A stretch of 64,000 nt of DNA, from positions 1 to 64,000 of the IMG/VR virus record IMGVR_UViG_3300009430_000004; one strand, 5' to 3'. The position numbers and the translations under genes are program-made. Shown piece by piece: positions 34,771 through 57,490 of this stretch (position 1 is the stretch's first letter; the number at the start of each line of letters is the position of its first letter). A model generated the notes under the pieces. That model ran no database searches and was not told the origin of the DNA. It saw nothing but the letters and a program-made list of their open reading frames with translations.

Positions 34771-34784
34771 TATATTATAGGAGG

Positions 34785-36500
34785 ATGGGGAAAATGAGCA
34801 ATACAATATTTACACCAAATTATGACTGGAATGTCATTGACGAGAAAAACTTCAAGGATAGAGTACACATGGTATTCAATCAAGTTGCTGGAGCACTTGT
34901 CAATACATTAGGACCATATGGGTCAACTACAATCATTGAAAAATATGGTGAAATGCATATCACTAAAGACGGATGGCAAGTATTAAAGAAGATCCACTTT
35001 GGTGACCCTGTAAACAATAATATCATGCACTTGCTTATTAATATAAGTGCACAGGTAGTTCTTAGAGTTGGTGATGGAAGTACATCTTCCATTATAGCAG
35101 CTAATACTATTCTCAATCGTTTAGAGAATAATCCAACATTGAAGAAGATGAGACCTAAAGAATTCTTAAAGGTTTTATCTGCGGCTGTTGAATTGATATC
35201 ACAAAGAATTCTGGACTTCTCTTCTAAAATCAATAAGGAGAATGACCCAGATTTCAATGAAATATATAAGTTAGCTATGATTTCTACAAATGGTGATGAT
35301 GATGTTTCAAAAGTTATTCAAACCATTTACAGAGAAACAGTTAACCCAAGTATTGAATTTGTTCAATCAAAGACTAACAAGACCACATATGAAATCATAG
35401 AAGGCTATAAATTAGCTAATATGACTTACATTGATGGTATATTTGCTAATGGTGATGACGGTACTTGTTCTATTACAAAACCAATAATCATCATGTTTGA
35501 CCATAAGATTGACAAAGAAACACACTTTGATAAGATACTTACAAATGCTATACAAGTGGCTTTAGCCCAAGAAAGAAGAATAGTTATAGTCGCTCCAAAC
35601 TATGATAAGTATTTGCTTAACATGCTCGGTACTGCTATACCTATGGAATATAAAGCTAGAGGTACAAGCACTTCTGTGTATGCTAGAGTATCACTAATCA
35701 ACAATATGTCACATGAGTTATATAATGATTTCGCTACTATGACTGGCGGAATGATTATCAGAGAAACTCATATTGACCAGCTTGTAGATGGTACATTGAA
35801 AGTAGATGAATTCCTCGGTGAAGTTGACAACATCGTCATCGGAGATACATCAACTCTAATCAAAGGATTCTACAAGAGAAATGAGGACATGTACAATGTA
35901 TGTGTTAACGATGCTACAGCTAAGTACAAGAAAGTTGAAGCTACACATAGAGAGCTTGGAATAGTAAACTCTGAGTTATATGAGCTAAAACAAAGACTGG
36001 CTAAGCTTAGAGGTAAAATGGGAGTTATCTATGTAGGTGGAAACTCCTCACTTGAAAAAGTAAGTAACTATGACCTTGTAGAAGATGCTGTTAAAGCATG
36101 TGAATCAGCTTACAACTATGGGTACAATATAGGTGGTAACTTGATTCTTCCGATAGCTATAAGGCATATTAAAGAGAATACAGAAAATCTTTCAGACAAC
36201 ACAAAACTTATACTTGACTTATTAAATGATGCTTTCAGGGATGTATTTGTTAAGGTGCTTGGTAACAAGTTCACTGAGGAAAGAGATACAGGCTCTGATA
36301 AGTTATATGACATAGTAGATAAGTGTGTTGATTCTTGGAAGTGTTATGATTTAATCACTGATGAATACAGTGATAATGTAATTAATTCGTGCTTCACTGA
36401 TATTGAAATATTAAAGGCTGCAACATCAATAGTTTCACTGTTGATATCAAGTAACCAATATGTATCAATTATGGTGAGCAACTCTGAAGTACAACAATAA
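34785..36500 (+). CDS. Phage chaperonin (GroEL-like, AR9 gp228 type)
   Basis: TLGPYG, ITKDGW, VGDGSTSS, EDAVKA..A..YG..IGG motifs. No adjacent GroES gene. Likely start is ATG 34794. Confidence 0.9.
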   Translation: MGKMSNTIFTPNYDWNVIDEKNFKDRVHMVFNQVAGALVNTLGPYGSTTIIEKYGEMHITKDGWQVLKKIHFGDPVNNNIMHLLINISAQVVLRVGDGSTSSIIAANTILNRLENNPTLKKMRPKEFLKVLSAAVELISQRILDFSSKINKENDPDFNEIYKLAMISTNGDDDVSKVIQTIYRETVNPSIEFVQSKTNKTTYEIIEGYKLANMTYIDGIFANGDDGTCSITKPIIIMFDHKIDKETHFDKILTNAIQVALAQERRIVIVAPNYDKYLLNMLGTAIPMEYKARGTSTSVYARVSLINNMSHELYNDFATMTGGMIIRETHIDQLVDGTLKVDEFLGEVDNIVIGDTSTLIKGFYKRNEDMYNVCVNDATAKYKKVEATHRELGIVNSELYELKQRLAKLRGKMGVIYVGGNSSLEKVSNYDLVEDAVKACESAYNYGYNIGGNLILPIAIRHIKENTENLSDNTKLILDLLNDAFRDVFVKVLGNKFTEERDTGSDKLYDIVDKCVDSWKCYDLITDEYSDNVINSCFTDIEILKAATSIVSLLISSNQYVSIMVSNSEVQQ

Positions 36501-37375: not shown

Positions 37376-37385
37376 TATATATTAT
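37376..37385 (+). promoter_or_regulatory. Early promoter (sigma-like gene)
   Basis: TATATATTAT. Confidence 0.7.
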
Positions 37386-38991: not shown

Positions 38992-40020
38992 TTGGATAAA
39001 CGAGAGCTTAAGACTAAAATACGAACTGCACTACTAAGAGTGCAATCGGCTAGACAAACTTCAGGAGAACAAATTACATTGAGGTGTCCATTCTGTGGGG
39101 ATAGTATGAAGGATATAACTCATGCACACTTTAATGTGAAGATTAATTTATATGATGATGAACCTATAATATTCCACTGTTTTAGATGTGATATAGGGGG
39201 AATACTTACCCCATCACTACTAAGAACATTTAAGATTAGTGACCTACAAATGAATAGTGGGTTAATATCTTATAATAAAGAAACTATGGGTAAAGTAAAT
39301 AAGTCATTAGGAATTATCAATAATGACTTCAATTTTAGAGTACCTATGCCATCAGATTCTGAGAAAACCTATAAGAAGAAAGTTTACATTGAAAAAAGAA
39401 TGGGTAGACCATTTACGATAGAGGAATTAGTCGGTCATAAAGTTGTATTCAATCTTGGGGACTTTCTTAGAGAGAATGGGATAGATACTTTGACTGTAAA
39501 AAAGGAACAAGCAAAGCTTCTTCATGAAGATTATGTTGGGTTCCTAACGGCAAAGAATGAATTTATAAACTTCAGAGATATAACGGGGAATAATAAAAGA
39601 TACTACAAGTATAGTATCTTTAAGACTCTTGACAATACAAGAAAACAATATGTTATGCCTAATCAAATAGACCTGTTGTCTAATAATGAAATAGTTATAA
39701 ATATAGCTGAAGGTGTATTTGATATATTTGGTATATACTATCATCTTTTCGATCAAGAAAAGAAAAATATGATTTATACCGCAGTATGTGGTTCAGGTTA
39801 CATATCCGTATTGAAATACTTTATTCAAATGGGTGTAATCGGAAACGTAATAGTTAATATCTTCTCAGACTCAGATAGAACACCTAAGTTTTATAAAGAC
39901 CTTGAACTTGAAGACCAGATTAAGGATTGGGTAAAAACAATCAATCTGTTTTACAATGAAAAAGGTAAGGACTATGGTGTCACTAAGGATGAGATAAAGT
40001 TAATAAAGAAAAAATTATAA
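38992..40020 (+). CDS. DNA primase (DnaG-like)
   Basis: Zinc finger RCPFCGDS..H..FHCFRC and TOPRIM IAEGVFD..IFSDSD, KDYG. Confidence 0.8.
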   Translation: MDKRELKTKIRTALLRVQSARQTSGEQITLRCPFCGDSMKDITHAHFNVKINLYDDEPIIFHCFRCDIGGILTPSLLRTFKISDLQMNSGLISYNKETMGKVNKSLGIINNDFNFRVPMPSDSEKTYKKKVYIEKRMGRPFTIEELVGHKVVFNLGDFLRENGIDTLTVKKEQAKLLHEDYVGFLTAKNEFINFRDITGNNKRYYKYSIFKTLDNTRKQYVMPNQIDLLSNNEIVINIAEGVFDIFGIYYHLFDQEKKNMIYTAVCGSGYISVLKYFIQMGVIGNVIVNIFSDSDRTPKFYKDLELEDQIKDWVKTINLFYNEKGKDYGVTKDEIKLIKKKL

Positions 40021-40151
40021 CCGAAGGTAATAATCCTTCAGTTATAATTTTTTTTGGCGGGTAATTGTCATCTTCTCTAGGATAGGAAACAATGTTTTTG
40101 ACACAAAAAATACATTTATCTTTATAGGGTAACAAATTGTATTTGTATCTT
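40010..40151 (-). ncRNA. Candidate small RNA 2 (late promoter to terminator, about 140 nt)
   Basis: AACA TTTATT TA promoter at 40151-40162, terminator hairpin at 40011-40051, paralogous to sRNA 1. Confidence 0.45.
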
Positions 40152-40169
40152 AAATAAATGTTGAATTGA

Positions 40170-40262
40170 TAAAAAATTACAACTGAAGAATAACTTCAGT
40201 TGTAATCTTTCATTGTAATCAATACATTATATTATAGGAGATAAAATTTGTACTTTTATCTT
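40170..40262 (-). ncRNA. Candidate small RNA 1 (late promoter to terminator, about 90 nt)
   Basis: AACA TTAAAG TA promoter at 40262-40273, 5' hairpin AGAUAAAA/UUUUAUCU, and terminator at 40176-40206 followed by U6. Confidence 0.45.
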
Positions 40263-40345
40263 ACTTTAATGTTAGCAATAGAATATTATATTTTTCTTTT
40301 TTTAACAATTAATTAAAAATAAATAAAGATAGGTGGTGAACTTAA

Positions 40346-41536
40346 ATGGGATTTCTTGTAAACGAGAAGCAGTTTATTAATGATAATATATTCAAATACG
40401 AAGAGCGTATGAATTCCCAATATTCTCAGTTTCTGGATAAAGCACCAACATACGTATCATATTATCATATAAGTAATATTGAAAGTATAACGGACACTGG
40501 ATTGCTTAATGTGGAACAAATATTGGGTCCAAATTCCCCATTGAAGTATAAGCAGATAAATGACTTCCCTATATATGGTGTTGAACAAGTTCTTCTTGAC
40601 TTGAACGATGAGGAAGAAGGATTGAATACCAGTTTTGAAGGTGAGGCTATAATCCTGCCTAATACTGTCAAACCGTTACCGAACGATTTCTTCACAATAA
40701 GTTACATGGATAGCAACTATCTCTTTATGGTAACACAGATTAGTTATGATACCATCAAGAGTAATAACTATTATAAGATAAATTTTACAATTAAGTCCTT
40801 GGATGGTGATGGGGTAAGTAAGCTTGCATCACAGACTACTGAAAAGTTTACTTGCATTGTGGAGAATATAGGTACACAGGAGAAGTGTATCATAAGAAAT
40901 GATGACTTGAGCTTAATACTCAAGCTTAATACTATCTATAAGAATATAGTGAATAGATACAAAATGTTATTCTTCAATAAAAAATATAACAATTTTATAT
41001 TCGTTACTGAAGATATTAAAATTTATGACAAATATTTATCTCACTTCATGAATACTAACAAAATTCTGAATGAGAAATATGATTATGAAACAGTCTTCCT
41101 AACTAATGAAGACCCAACTAACACATTCCTATATGAGTATGAGACTTCATTGTTTAGGAACATAGAAACTCTGAATAAAAGCAAGCTAAAACATGTTGAT
41201 TATAGTCAAAGACTTATATCCAATCCTCAGTCTTGCTTTAGGTTCTATAGGGACAATGCAGTAAGGAGTGTGTCCTTTTTAAATGGAACAATACCGTATA
41301 TATCCCATGAATTAATTGATAGGATAAAATCGAAGGAGGTATTACAGACAGATGGTATAGTGAACAAAATCCTAATAGACTATTTCAATAAGTCAACGAC
41401 ATCTATTGCTAGTTTAGATCTCACAGCATTAGAGGACTACGACTACATTGATTATAGTTTCGAGAGCTTTGTTCTAATACCTGTAATTCTGTATATCCTG
41501 AGATATTATTACAGTATTTTCATGGCTATTAAATAA
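40346..41536 (+). CDS. Virion structural protein (neck/head-closure-like candidate)
   Basis: Late promoter at 40304-40315; beta-barrel-like N-terminal half (ILPNTVKPLPNDFF). Confidence 0.5.
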   Translation: MGFLVNEKQFINDNIFKYEERMNSQYSQFLDKAPTYVSYYHISNIESITDTGLLNVEQILGPNSPLKYKQINDFPIYGVEQVLLDLNDEEEGLNTSFEGEAIILPNTVKPLPNDFFTISYMDSNYLFMVTQISYDTIKSNNYYKINFTIKSLDGDGVSKLASQTTEKFTCIVENIGTQEKCIIRNDDLSLILKLNTIYKNIVNRYKMLFFNKKYNNFIFVTEDIKIYDKYLSHFMNTNKILNEKYDYETVFLTNEDPTNTFLYEYETSLFRNIETLNKSKLKHVDYSQRLISNPQSCFRFYRDNAVRSVSFLNGTIPYISHELIDRIKSKEVLQTDGIVNKILIDYFNKSTTSIASLDLTALEDYDYIDYSFESFVLIPVILYILRYYYSIFMAIK

Positions 41537-42324: not shown

Positions 42325-42359
42325 CAAGCCTCATAAGTGTTAATCACTTATGAGGCTTG
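42325..42359. terminator. Bidirectional terminator
   Basis: CAAGCCTCATAAGTG-ttaat-CACTTATGAGGCTTG. Confidence 0.9.
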
Positions 42360-43530
42360 TATTTATTTCATACAATAATCATTTGTGGAACTTCTATATA
42401 TTTAATCTACATGTTTTATTTTTTCCCACATTTTATTTATAGGCGTTCTAACAGTGTCGCCTTTATATTTTAGTTTCATAAATTCTCAAAAACCTTATTT
42501 CATCGTAATGATACTTTATTTTTTCTAATCCTTAGTTTAAATTCACATTTAATAGACATCTATATATAACTAATAGATACCTTCATCTAACTTAACTCAC
42601 TTTATAATCTTCAGTAAGTAATTATCTTTGCTCACTTCTGTGAATTAAACCTTCGTAATATTTATGTTTTTACCCATGTTTGTTTTTCACATTGTTTAAT
42701 ATAACAATAGTGCTCTGAAATAATAATTAATAATCTTTCTACAACGAAACTACGAATAATATAAAACAATTAATACTTAACTATTAACAGTTAAACCTTG
42801 TTTAGTAACAACTTTTTGGTGTTTAAAAATTATGTCAATGAACATACGAACGTACGGTATCTAAATAGATTTATTCGTTATCATTGTCATCATCCTCAAC
42901 TCCAATAGTGTCTCCGTCTAATATGATATCATCTCTATCGTCCATAATACTTACTACATACATTCACGTATATAGTAGTCTGCCGATCATAATAAACACT
43001 ATTCTTGTTTACGACTGATTTACATTGTAATAGGTTTAATTATAAACATTCCCACATGTTTTTAATAAAAACTTCTATCGAGGCTCTTGCCTTCTATATT
43101 TTGCGGTTGAGTATATCTCAACTATTTTTTACCCTTTTTTTCAACAAATTTGCGTTTTACGCCCCACGTGACTACGACGACCGCCACGCTTCCAGACACG
43201 ACGTGCAAATATAGAATAGTACATTGCAACATAGAACCTATAATCTACATTACGGAACATAGATTATATTGAACGACCGATTAATACTTCGTATAAACTT
43301 TATGTGGGTGGAAACTACAATATACTACAAGAATATACGTAGCCTACCCTCCTTTCTTTCTAAAATTTGTAGTATTTACCGCTAGTAATGAAAGAAAACA
43401 TATTCGTTTATACATCACCCCCTACACATTTTTTAAACTCCCACAGTCGGTCAAATCTGTGGAATCATGTACAAGGGGATCGCTCACCATCATAAAATGC
43501 CATAAAAATCACCCTCCCTTCAATATATTA

Positions 43531-43540
43531 GTAATATATA
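43531..43540 (-). promoter_or_regulatory. Early promoter TATATATTAC
   Basis: Contains the phiKZ early core TATATTAC, followed by the AAGGGAGGGTGA SD. Confidence 0.65.
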
Positions 43541-43715
43541 AATTAACTAACTACATTAAACAGGGTGGACGTTAACCAGGACATTCCATTTTTATCGCCT
43601 CCTTTGGCTCATTATTAATTGAGGTCGTATGTTCCAACTCCTCAACATTCCTTGATATACCCAATTGGGTTCCAACATCTCGCTCATTACAGTACCAATC
43701 AGGTATATCATAATA

Positions 43716-43725
43716 ATAATATATA
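43716..43725 (-). promoter_or_regulatory. Early promoter TATATATTAT
   Basis: Exact motif, followed by a 15-bp stem-loop. Confidence 0.65.
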
Positions 43726-43756
43726 ATTTAATGGTTTAAAAATACGGAAAAATAAA

Positions 43757-43791
43757 ATATGGTTATATGGAATCAATCCATATAACCATAT
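43757..43791 (-). terminator. Terminator after beta' N gene
   Basis: ATATGGTTATATGGA-atcaa-TCCATATAACCATAT. Confidence 0.88.
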
Positions 43792-43794
43792 CTT

Positions 43795-57420: not shown

Positions 57421-57490
57421 AATCGGGTAATGAATATAAAATTATATTTCAGGTAACAAAAAAATAATTATATTATTAGGAGGTAATATC

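What the first reader, a model, noticed from the sequence alone, without database searches (positions are those of the whole stretch)
40010..40275. Two tandem paralogous small late RNAs with a covarying 5' hairpin and anti-Shine-Dalgarno core
Seen: the primase-structural gene gap holds two minus-strand units, each consisting of a late promoter AACA-N6-TA (+1 at 40262 and 40151), a homologous ~50-nt body and a homologous hairpin terminator (..AACTGAAG/CTTC(A/G)GTT..). Unit 1 begins AGAUAAAA-GUACAAA-UUUUAUCU (8-bp stem). Unit 2 begins AGAUACAAAU-ACA-AUUUGU, where an A-U pair of unit 1 is C-G, a compensatory change. The stem is followed by CUCCUAUAAUAUA (unit 1) or ACCCUAUAAAG (unit 2). The unit 1 segment is a perfect 13-nt complement of the chaperonin RBS region TATATTATAGGAG (34771-34783), with shorter matches to other TATAGGAG RBSs (26.3 kb, 28.5 kb). 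Unit 2 matches TATAGGG-type RBSs (33572, 31263). Inference: a pair of late anti-SD sRNAs that shut down earlier phage or host translation. Alternative reading: the plus strand has AGGAG + TTG at 40248-40316 encoding a 22-aa hydrophobic peptide (MYFYLTLMLAIEYYIFLFLTIN), which would make this a type I toxin/antitoxin-like layout. AT-rich DNA yields such peptides by chance.
Basis: partly seen in the sequence, partly recalled or inferred. Interest (0 to 1): 0.75.

Follow-up and report, generated by a model that had tools for sequence, protein, structure and literature searches.

The report
Two late small RNAs, jumbo phage

Summary
The window is the start of a 218-kb AR9/PBS1-like jumbo phage genome from a groundwater metagenome. 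Two minus-strand AACA-N6-TAA sites (+1 at 40262 and 40151) score like this phage's true late promoters. They are the only such sites in the genome with no gene behind them. Each is followed by a strong hairpin plus U-run. The two units are clear paralogues. Predicted RNAs are about 92 and 143 nt, with no credible ORF.

A unit with the same layout lies upstream of the head-tail gene in 11 of 17 lineages examined. It starts 43-76 bp back-to-back with that gene's late promoter, usually has a 5'-terminal stem-loop, carries an accessible C-rich (CUCC/CCC) stretch, and ends in a terminator. The UCUCCUAUAAUA stretch of unit 1 is identical in a relative whose flanking protein is only 55% identical.

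Not supported:
- the chaperonin target, since 10% of control windows reach a 13-nt match and there is no co-variation across lineages;
- an anti-SD core in unit 2;
- the type I toxin-antitoxin reading.

The hairpin covariation rests on a single pair. No RNA data could be found. Best reading: a new family of late phage small RNAs, probably acting by base pairing at Shine-Dalgarno regions. The target is unknown.

The parts
40262..40273 (-). Late (AR9 nvRNAP-type) promoter of unit 1: AACA (40273-40270), N6, TA, with +1 at 40262
   Evidence: Weight-matrix score 18.9, rank 17 of 214 AACA-N6-TA sites. No site inside a gene reaches 14.
40171..40262 (-). Predicted unit 1 RNA, about 92 nt
   Evidence: Runs from the promoter to the end of the U-run. 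MFE -29.9 kcal/mol, z -7.3 against shuffles. No ORF with an RBS.
40239..40261 (-). Unit 1 5'-terminal hairpin AGAUAAAA-GUACAAA-UUUUAUCU (RNA positions 2-24)
   Evidence: -5.0 kcal/mol. None of the other late leaders has a hairpin this stable starting before +5.
40226..40241 (-). Unit 1 C-rich, anti-SD-like stretch UCUCCUAUAAUAUAAU
   Evidence: SD complementarity beyond composition, p 0.006. UCUCCUAUAAUA is identical in relative L043 unit B. It is half buried in the 5' stem (P unpaired 0.51).
40170..40211 (-). Unit 1 terminator: hairpin with stem 40176-40206, then U6 on the minus strand
   Evidence: More stable as minus-strand RNA than as plus-strand RNA (-20.7 against -15.9 kcal/mol).
40151..40162 (-). 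Late promoter of unit 2: AACA (40162-40159), N6, TA, with +1 at 40151
   Evidence: Score 16.3, rank 36 of 214.
40009..40151 (-). Predicted unit 2 RNA, about 143 nt. It is a paralogue of unit 1 with an extra stretch of about 45-50 nt in the body.
   Evidence: MFE -35.1 kcal/mol, z -5.8.
40100..40149 (-). Unit 2 predicted 5' stem-loop (RNA positions 3-52) with ACCCUAUAAA in the apical loop
   Evidence: The CCCU is unpaired with P 0.99. This is a prediction from a single sequence only.
40009..40053 (.). Bidirectional terminator hairpin. It ends unit 2 on the minus strand and the early RNAP-subunit/primase operon on the plus strand (T8 follows it).
   Evidence: It pairs fully as minus-strand RNA, including one G-U pair that is a C-A mismatch on the plus strand.
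40304..40315 (+). Late promoter of the head-tail joining gene, +1 at 40315, 53 bp back-to-back with the unit 1 start
   Evidence: score 22.4, rank 3 of 214.
40248..40316 (+). 22-codon TTG ORF (MYFYLTLMLAIEYYIFLFLTIN), judged not to be a gene
   Evidence: It lies upstream of the plus-strand late start site and has no plus-strand promoter (early matrix score -10 at 40228). The mirror ORFs in relatives are not conserved.
38992..40020 (+). Primase-like gene, the last gene of an early operon that starts at the early promoter at 37378
   Evidence: PHROG 19847 DNA primase, E 5.7e-57. Early promoter score 24.7.
40346..41536 (+). Head-tail joining / virion structural gene, a late gene
   Evidence: PF24214, E 2.9e-13. 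30% identical to a protein annotated 'virion structural protein' in the AR9 record.

Best explanation
The gap holds two tandem, recently duplicated late transcription units read from the minus strand by the phage's non-virion RNA polymerase. Each starts at an AACA-N6-TAA promoter and stops at an intrinsic terminator. The products are small non-coding RNAs of about 92 nt (unit 1) and about 143 nt (unit 2).

They belong to a fast-evolving family found upstream of the head-tail joining gene in many AR9-like metagenomic jumbo phages, back-to-back with that gene's late promoter.

Shown from sequence: promoter quality, terminators, paralogy, absence of credible coding, and recurrence of the layout in relatives.

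Inferred: the 5'-terminal stem-loop and the 3' terminator make a stable RNA. Its accessible C-rich stretch (UCUCCUAUAAUA in unit 1) pairs with Shine-Dalgarno regions of mRNAs late in infection and lowers their translation. The preferred targets would be mRNAs with UAUAGGAG-type sites, which here belong to early-class genes. The actual target or targets are unknown, and unit 2 has no clear anti-SD stretch.
For: (1) AACA-N6-TAA is this phage's late promoter. It is enriched 18-40 nt before start codons and matches the published AR9 late consensus (PMC5312081).
(2) The two sites are the only orphans among high-scoring sites in 218 kb, and no site inside a gene scores as high.
(3) Hairpin plus U-run follows on the minus strand. 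AR9 transcription was reported to stop at predicted terminators of this kind (PMC5312081).
(4) Thirteen units in 11 lineages share the layout. The flanking proteins are 46-61% identical to the window's, and the gap sequences cannot be aligned. One relative, L043, also has two units. A further unit lies at a second locus in relative G002.
(5) In five relatives' loci, the minus-strand site is among the top three core-scoring promoter sites, next to two gene promoters.
(6) A stem-loop begins within the first three bases in eight of the 13 units, but in no ordinary late leader at comparable stability.
(7) The C-rich stretches are mostly unpaired in predicted folds. They are more SD-complementary than composition predicts (Fisher p about 5e-4).
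(8) UCUCCUAUAAUA is identical between unit 1 and L043 unit B, while the 5' hairpin and terminator differ.
(9) Early-class initiation regions pair slightly better with the unit 1 stretch than late-class ones (Mann-Whitney p 0.005). Late genes use a distinct GAAAGGnGTGA type of site.
Against: - No transcript evidence of any kind.
- No Rfam family matches.
- No individual target stands out.
- Unit 2 shows no anti-SD signal.
- The L011-lineage promoter scores poorly with its own genome's matrix.
- Six of the 17 lineages lack the unit: L042, L045, L047, L048, L016 and L029. In a seventh, L049, the promoter abuts the terminator with no body.
- Every C-rich stretch is also, on the plus strand, an SD followed in most lineages by a start codon. 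The constraint could therefore lie on the other strand.
- The family-level tests were defined after looking at the data.
Confidence: 0.5

Rival explanations
1. The divergent promoter works at the DNA or transcription level, and the RNA itself has no function. The minus-strand late promoter exists to help or insulate the neighbouring plus-strand late promoter, for example through transcription-driven supercoiling or polymerase recruitment. Alternatively it is the kept remnant of an ancestral divergent late gene pair. The terminator only stops antisense transcription from running into the early primase operon.
For: - The unit always starts 43-76 bp back-to-back with the head-tail gene's late promoter.
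- In AR9, BpSp and L045 the same position holds a divergently transcribed gene, so a divergent late promoter is probably ancestral.
- In L049 the promoter abuts the terminator with no body.
- No trans target was found.
Against: - The AACA-N6-TA motif is not symmetric, so it must be kept by selection.
- The units have been duplicated with intact promoter and terminator in two lineages.
- There is a conserved 12-nt stretch inside the body.
- 5' stem-loops and accessible C-rich stretches recur.
- A similar unit in G002 sits next to an early promoter, not a late one.
Confidence: 0.2
2. The units act as cis-antisense regulators. The late RNAs act only on plus-strand read-through transcripts of the same gap. 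They pair with the SD-plus-start-codon element found there in most lineages and so block or process early read-through RNA late in infection.
For: - In 9-10 of 14 units, the C-rich stretch is followed at 2-13 nt by the complement of a start codon. It therefore mirrors a complete initiation region. My rough estimate for ATG alone is p about 0.002, made after looking at the data.
- In four relatives the upstream hairpin has no plus-strand U-run, so read-through is plausible.
Against: - In the window the early operon ends at a hairpin followed by T8.
- No plus-strand promoter lies in the gap.
- The micro-ORFs are 4-30 codons and unrelated in sequence. L007 has none.
Confidence: 0.12
3. A type I toxin-antitoxin-like pair: the plus-strand 22-codon hydrophobic ORF (40248-40316) is a small toxin, and the unit 1 RNA is its antisense antitoxin.
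For: - AGGAG lies 7 nt before the TTG start, and the peptide is hydrophobic.
- The unit 1 RNA would cover the RBS and the first five codons.
- L043 unit B has a 13-codon hydrophobic mirror ORF.
Against: - There is no early or late promoter for the ORF. The TATATTAT at 40228 scores -10 on this phage's early-promoter matrix.
- The ORF runs across the plus-strand late promoter and its T-rich upstream tract, which by itself yields Phe/Leu/Ile codons.
- The mirror ORFs in relatives are 4, 7, 8, 11, 13, 20 and 30 codons, are not similar, and are absent in L007.
- The homologous ORF in unit 2 is 6 codons.
Confidence: 0.04
4. Chance or transcriptional noise: the promoter-like sites and hairpins carry no selected function beyond terminating the early operon.
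For: AT-rich DNA produces AACA-N6-TW often (576 sites in the genome). Hairpin 1 is needed anyway as the early operon's terminator.
Against: High-scoring sites are otherwise found only in front of genes. The same layout recurs in 11 lineages whose gap sequences cannot be aligned. The chance of an AACA-N6-TAA on the right strand of a 200-bp gap is about 0.05 per lineage (my estimate from base composition).
Confidence: 0.1

Closest known systems
AR9 late (non-virion RNA polymerase) transcription units, including the late antisense RNAs reported by dRNA-seq (Lavysh et al. 2017, PMC5312081)
   Same: Same promoter consensus, AACA-N6-TA with the last base as the start site. Termination at hairpin plus U-run. 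AR9 also has late promoters that drive non-mRNA (antisense) transcripts.
   Different: The AR9 cases reported are antisense to genes, not short self-contained intergenic units. At the orthologous AR9 locus, the divergent late promoter drives a virion protein gene. The phage here is only about 30% identical to AR9 in the neighbouring protein.
C-rich-motif base-pairing small RNAs of Firmicutes (RsaE/RoxS and the UCCC-loop Rsa RNAs of Staphylococcus), which pair with Shine-Dalgarno sequences (from my own knowledge)
   Same: Small size, a terminator at the 3' end, and unpaired C-rich stretches in loops or linkers that are complementary to GGAG/GGGA.
   Different: No sequence or Rfam relationship. 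These are phage-encoded, driven by a phage polymerase promoter, and highly variable between lineages. No target has been identified.
Phage antisense RNAs that mask ribosome-binding sites (P1/P7 c4, P4 CI RNA, lambda OOP) (from my own knowledge)
   Same: A small phage-encoded RNA whose proposed action is pairing at or near an RBS.
   Different: Those act in temperate-phage immunity or lysogeny circuits, on defined targets encoded nearby. Here the phage is a lytic-type jumbo phage, the timing is late, and no defined target exists.
T4 RegB endoribonuclease (from my own knowledge)
   Same: Functional analogy only: shutting off earlier mRNAs by attacking the GGAG of their Shine-Dalgarno sequences.
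   Different: RegB is a protein enzyme, not an RNA, and it acts early rather than late.
Type I toxin-antitoxin loci (Ibs/Sib, BsrG/SR4 and others)
   Same: A small hydrophobic ORF faces an antisense small RNA that covers its RBS (unit 1 only).
   Different: There is no promoter for the ORF, and it is not conserved in presence, length or sequence. See the membership test.

Membership tests
AR9-type late transcription unit (non-virion RNA polymerase) | AACA-N6-T(A/G) promoter, with the last base as the start site | tested here: met
   Both units carry it. The consensus is from PMC5312081.
AR9-type late transcription unit (non-virion RNA polymerase) | Sequence context like the genome's own proven-by-position late promoters (A at +2, W-rich N6, T-rich upstream) | tested here: met
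   Scores 18.9 and 16.3 on a matrix not trained on them. No site inside a gene reaches 14.
AR9-type late transcription unit (non-virion RNA polymerase) | A transcript appears late in infection | not testable with these tools
   Only one DNA metagenome run holds the sequence, and no RNA run was listed.
AR9-type late transcription unit (non-virion RNA polymerase) | The phage encodes the split multisubunit RNA polymerases | tested here: met
   PHROG 2986 and 25005 RNA polymerase subunits lie in the window. The closest cultured relatives are AR9 and PBS1.
Trans-acting base-pairing small RNA with an anti-SD seed | No coding capacity | tested here: met
   No minus-strand ORF with an RBS.
Trans-acting base-pairing small RNA with an anti-SD seed | An accessible seed complementary to SD sequences, beyond what composition gives | tested here: inconclusive
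   Unit 1 p 0.006. Unit 2 p 0.65. Family Fisher p about 5e-4. Accessibility is 0.51 for unit 1 and 0.67 or more in 10 of 13 units.
Trans-acting base-pairing small RNA with an anti-SD seed | The seed is more conserved than the rest of the RNA | tested here: met
   UCUCCUAUAAUA is identical in L043 unit B, while the hairpins differ. This rests on one informative pair, with looser matches in L015 and L040.
Trans-acting base-pairing small RNA with an anti-SD seed | An identifiable target whose site co-varies with the seed | tested here: not met
   Targets are no better than for shuffles or control windows. GroEL TIR co-variation has permutation p 0.21. No TIR twin was found.
Any described RNA family (Rfam 15) | A covariance-model match at the gathering score | tested here: not met
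   No hit in the window. Only sub-threshold hairpin matches appear at E up to 10.
Type I toxin-antitoxin | A small toxin ORF conserved in presence and kind among relatives | tested here: not met
   The mirror ORFs are 4-30 codons and dissimilar, and L007 has none.
Type I toxin-antitoxin | A promoter for the toxin mRNA | tested here: not met
   There is no early or late promoter on the plus strand of the gap: the early matrix gives -10 at 40228 and the only plus-strand late site is downstream, at 40315. No plus-strand sigma-70-like site lies just upstream of the ORF (40100-40247); the nearest one ends at 40093.
Type I toxin-antitoxin | An antisense RNA overlapping the toxin mRNA | tested here: met
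   The unit 1 RNA (40171-40262) would overlap the RBS and codons 1-5 of the 40248 ORF.

The most novel reading that the evidence does not exclude
The units are general clamps on translation initiation regions. Each RNA carries an anti-SD stretch (CUCC/CCUCC) and, at natural RBS spacing, the complement of a start codon (CAU, the same triplet as the initiator tRNA anticodon). A highly expressed late RNA could then bind SD and AUG of many non-late mRNAs at once and shut off host and early-phage translation. Late mRNAs would escape through their distinct GAAAGGnGUGA sites. This would be an RNA counterpart of T4 RegB, and a new way for jumbo phages to time translation.
Probability: 0.1. Interest if true: 0.8.

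Novelty: new member of a known kind. Interest (0 to 1): 0.55.

Why it matters
To my knowledge, and in the two paper searches I ran, no small RNA with an assigned function turned up for AR9-like uracil-DNA jumbo phages, which run their own two RNA polymerases. If these units are expressed, they would be the first conserved small-RNA family tied to the late polymerase of this group. That would give a handle on how these phages switch translation from early to late programmes.

The promoter, short body and terminator also form a compact cassette for testing start and stop signals of the non-virion polymerase. The work shows as well that the appealing 13-nt chaperonin match should not guide experiments.

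Tried and rejected
- Rfam at gathering score on the whole window and at E up to 10 on the gap: nothing real.
- tRNA/tmRNA scan: none.
- Near-identity search of phage records: no match.
- Metagenome-contig scan with the head-tail protein alignment: no relatives.
- Sequencing runs: only one groundwater DNA run, and no RNA run was listed.
- Early promoter on the plus strand at 40228: rejected, matrix score -10 against 14 or more for about 48 intergenic early promoters.
- Chaperonin RBS as the target: the 13-mer is within chance, duplex energies are no better than for shuffles that keep CUCCU, and there is no lineage-specific match between small RNA and GroEL TIR.
- Specific TIR mimicry: the mirror TIRs are no closer to any real TIR than real TIRs are to each other.
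- Micro-diversity for covariation: repeat contigs of the same lineage are identical across the gap, so they give no information.
- Covariance model or R-scape: not attempted. The units of different lineages cannot be aligned outside the promoter and one seed block.
- Strand test by G-U pairs: the 5' stems and the window's terminators are more stable as minus-strand RNA. The segments were chosen from the minus-strand fold, so this is biased and counts only as weak support.
- Replicate orphan-promoter test in the full relative genome G002: less clean. There were several orphans; one drives tRNAs, some precede genes beyond my 120-nt cut-off and the rest were not resolved, and the orthologous site scores under 11 with that genome's matrix. 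It did reveal a second unit of the same layout.
- AR9, BpSp and LPJP1 orthologous loci: no unit. AR9 and BpSp have a divergent gene there, and LPJP1 has a same-strand upstream gene.
Full report
**Context**

The window is bases 1-64000 of a 218,088-bp IMG/VR virus record with direct terminal repeats. The only run holding it is a groundwater DNA metagenome. The window encodes split multisubunit RNA polymerase subunits and a GroEL-like chaperonin. Its head-tail joining protein is about 30% identical to those of Bacillus phages AR9, PBS1 and related jumbo phages.

The gap 40021-40345 lies between a primase-like gene (38992-40020, +) and the head-tail joining gene (40346-41536, +). Both flanking genes are on the plus strand.

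**This phage's promoters**

AACA-N6-TA sites cluster 18-40 nt before start codons. The 53 gene-proximal sites add an A at +2 (92%), a W-rich N6 and a T-rich upstream tract. This matches the published AR9 late consensus AACA-N6-TA/G, in which the last base is the start site (PMC5312081).

The early promoter is ttAatTATATATTAT-N5-TGTA, with about 48 intergenic sites. It resembles the AR9 early consensus. An early promoter at 37378 precedes the RNAP-subunit and primase genes, so the primase is an early gene. The head-tail gene has a top-ranking late promoter with +1 at 40315.

**The observation**

- Both minus-strand sites exist, with +1 at 40262 and 40151.
- On a matrix that was not trained on them, they score 18.9 and 16.3.
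- At a score of 16 or more there are 35 gene-proximal sites, no site inside a gene, and three orphans.
- Two of the orphans are these sites. The third, 217511+, has an RBS behind it.
- Each site is followed by a long hairpin with a U-run on the minus strand. The hairpin sequence occurs only here in the genome.
- Hairpin 40009-40053 also has T8 on the plus strand, so it ends the early operon as well.
- The units are paralogous in the promoter plus 5' end (79%) and in both terminator arms (80-88%). Unit 2 carries an extra 45-50 nt.
- Neither RNA has an ORF preceded by an RBS.
- Unit 1 has an 8-bp stem at +2..+24. Among the 53 late leaders, no other has a comparably stable hairpin starting before +5.

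Weaker parts of the observation:

- The short 5' hairpin of unit 2 is marginal (-1.3 kcal/mol).
- One inner pair changes from A-U to C-G, but three of the four outer pairs are lost.
- The MFE fold of unit 2 has a different, longer 5' stem-loop.

**Relatives**

I anchored searches on the head-tail protein and on the primase. This gave loci from IMG/VR and from the large protein collection.

A unit with the same layout lies in the gap upstream of the head-tail gene in 11 lineages: the window (two units), L040, L041, L043 (two units), L005, L011-14, L015/17, L027, L006/7, L044 and L046. Each unit consists of:

- a minus-strand AACA-N6-TA(A) promoter, 43-76 bp back-to-back with the plus-strand late promoter;
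- a body of 30-133 nt;
- a long hairpin with a minus-strand U-run next to the upstream gene's stop.

The gap sequences cannot be aligned between lineages. The flanking proteins are 46-61% identical to the window's.

The unit follows the head-tail gene rather than the primase. In the L006/7 lineage the primase lies elsewhere (L019), yet the unit stays with the head-tail gene.

Six of the 17 lineages examined lack it: L042, L045, L047, L048, L016 and L029. In L049 the promoter abuts the terminator with no body, so I do not count it as a unit. In AR9, BpSp and L045 a divergent gene sits in that place.

In five relatives' 7-kb loci, the minus-strand site is among the top three core-scoring sites, beside two gene promoters. 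A stem-loop begins within the first three bases in eight of the 13 units.

A full relative genome (G002, 264 kb) gave a noisier picture of orphan promoters. Its orthologous site scores low on its own matrix. It also contains a second unit of the same layout at another locus, 158318-.

**The anti-SD idea**

All 13 bodies have more C than G and carry CUCC, CCUCC or CCC stretches. These are mostly unpaired in predicted ensembles.

Complementarity to an ideal SD exceeds composition-matched shuffles for:

- unit 1, p 0.006;
- L007, p 0.02;
- L046, p 0.03;
- the family as a whole, Fisher p about 5e-4.

It does not for unit 2 (p 0.65).

UCUCCUAUAAUA is identical between unit 1 and L043 unit B, although their 5' regions and terminators differ. 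This is what a seed would look like.

Early-class initiation regions pair slightly better with this stretch than late-class ones (p 0.005). Late genes use a distinct GAAAGGnGTGA type of site.

**Targets**

- The 13-nt match to the chaperonin RBS is real.
- However, 10% of random 51-nt intergenic windows have an exact complement at least as long to some initiation region.
- Duplex energies are no better than for shuffles that keep CUCCU.
- TATATTAT is also the core of the early promoter, with 100 copies in the genome.
- Across six lineages, each small RNA does not pair better with its own GroEL initiation region than with the others' (p 0.21).
- The best match for unit 2 is 10 nt, which 65% of controls reach.

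No specific target can be named.

**The other strand**

Each C-rich stretch reads on the plus strand as an SD. In 9-10 of 14 units a start codon follows at 2-13 nt, which is more than I would expect by chance. The resulting ORFs are 4-30 codons and unrelated in sequence, and L007 has none.

In the window no early or late promoter feeds the plus strand of the gap. The 22-codon ORF runs through the T-rich tract and the late promoter of the head-tail gene. The mirror initiation regions resemble no real gene start more than real starts resemble each other.

I therefore reject the toxin-antitoxin reading. The start-codon complement remains unexplained. It could reflect cis-antisense action or pairing to both SD and AUG.

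**Verdict**

The structure is real and is very likely a pair of late small-RNA genes belonging to a conserved but fast-evolving family. Action at Shine-Dalgarno regions is the best-supported mechanism but is inferred, not shown. The named targets and the covariation claim do not hold up. Expression could not be tested.

Noticed in passing
window 42360-43750: About 1.4 kb with no credible ORF, bounded by two bidirectional terminator hairpins (42325-42359 and 43754-43794). An early-promoter-like site lies on the minus strand at 43723 (score 15.4). Relatives L040, L043 and L046 also have a gene-free stretch of about 0.8-1.1 kb at the same place. No Rfam match. It could be a long early non-coding RNA or another non-coding element.
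   Followed up: partly
window 57466-57490; also genome 174202, 188946 and 199414 (outside the window): Four unrelated genes share a near-identical leader, AATAATTATATTATTAGGAGGTAA. Two of the leaders sit behind an AACAAAAAAATA late promoter. They are among the best pairing partners of the unit 1 stretch, with a 1-nt bulge.
   Followed up: partly
window 34771-34796: The chaperonin gene has TATATTATAGGAGG directly before two in-frame ATGs (34785 and 34794). The TATATTAT here is not a good early promoter (score 3.7).
   Followed up: partly
whole genome (G000): Early-class and late-class genes use different ribosome-binding contexts. GAAAGG occurs in 21 of 84 late against 4 of 95 early genes. GGnGTGA occurs in 17 of 84 against 4 of 95. 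ATAGG(A/G)G occurs in 0 of 84 late against 6 of 95 early genes.
   Followed up: partly
G002 (L011-lineage genome) 158130-158318, minus strand: A second orphan late promoter, followed by a body of about 180 nt with CCUCC and then a terminator, lies between two plus-strand genes and next to an early promoter. It mirrors a 16-codon plus-strand ORF that has a GGAGG RBS.
   Followed up: partly
G002 76677 (+): A late promoter directly precedes what look like two tRNA genes in the relative's genome, judged by eye from the sequence without a tRNA scan. The window itself has no tRNA gene.
   Followed up: no
L005 2800-2835, L011 2800-2845, L015 2828-2865 (plus strand): The hairpin after the primase stop has unrelated stems in these three lineages but a conserved loop, (A)TGAGCA(G/A).
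   Followed up: no
window 77577 region (genome coordinate, outside the window): A weaker late-promoter-like site (score 13.0) is followed at once by AGAUAAGA-N7-UCUUAUCU, a 5' hairpin shaped like that of unit 1. It lies 48 nt before a gene.
   Followed up: no
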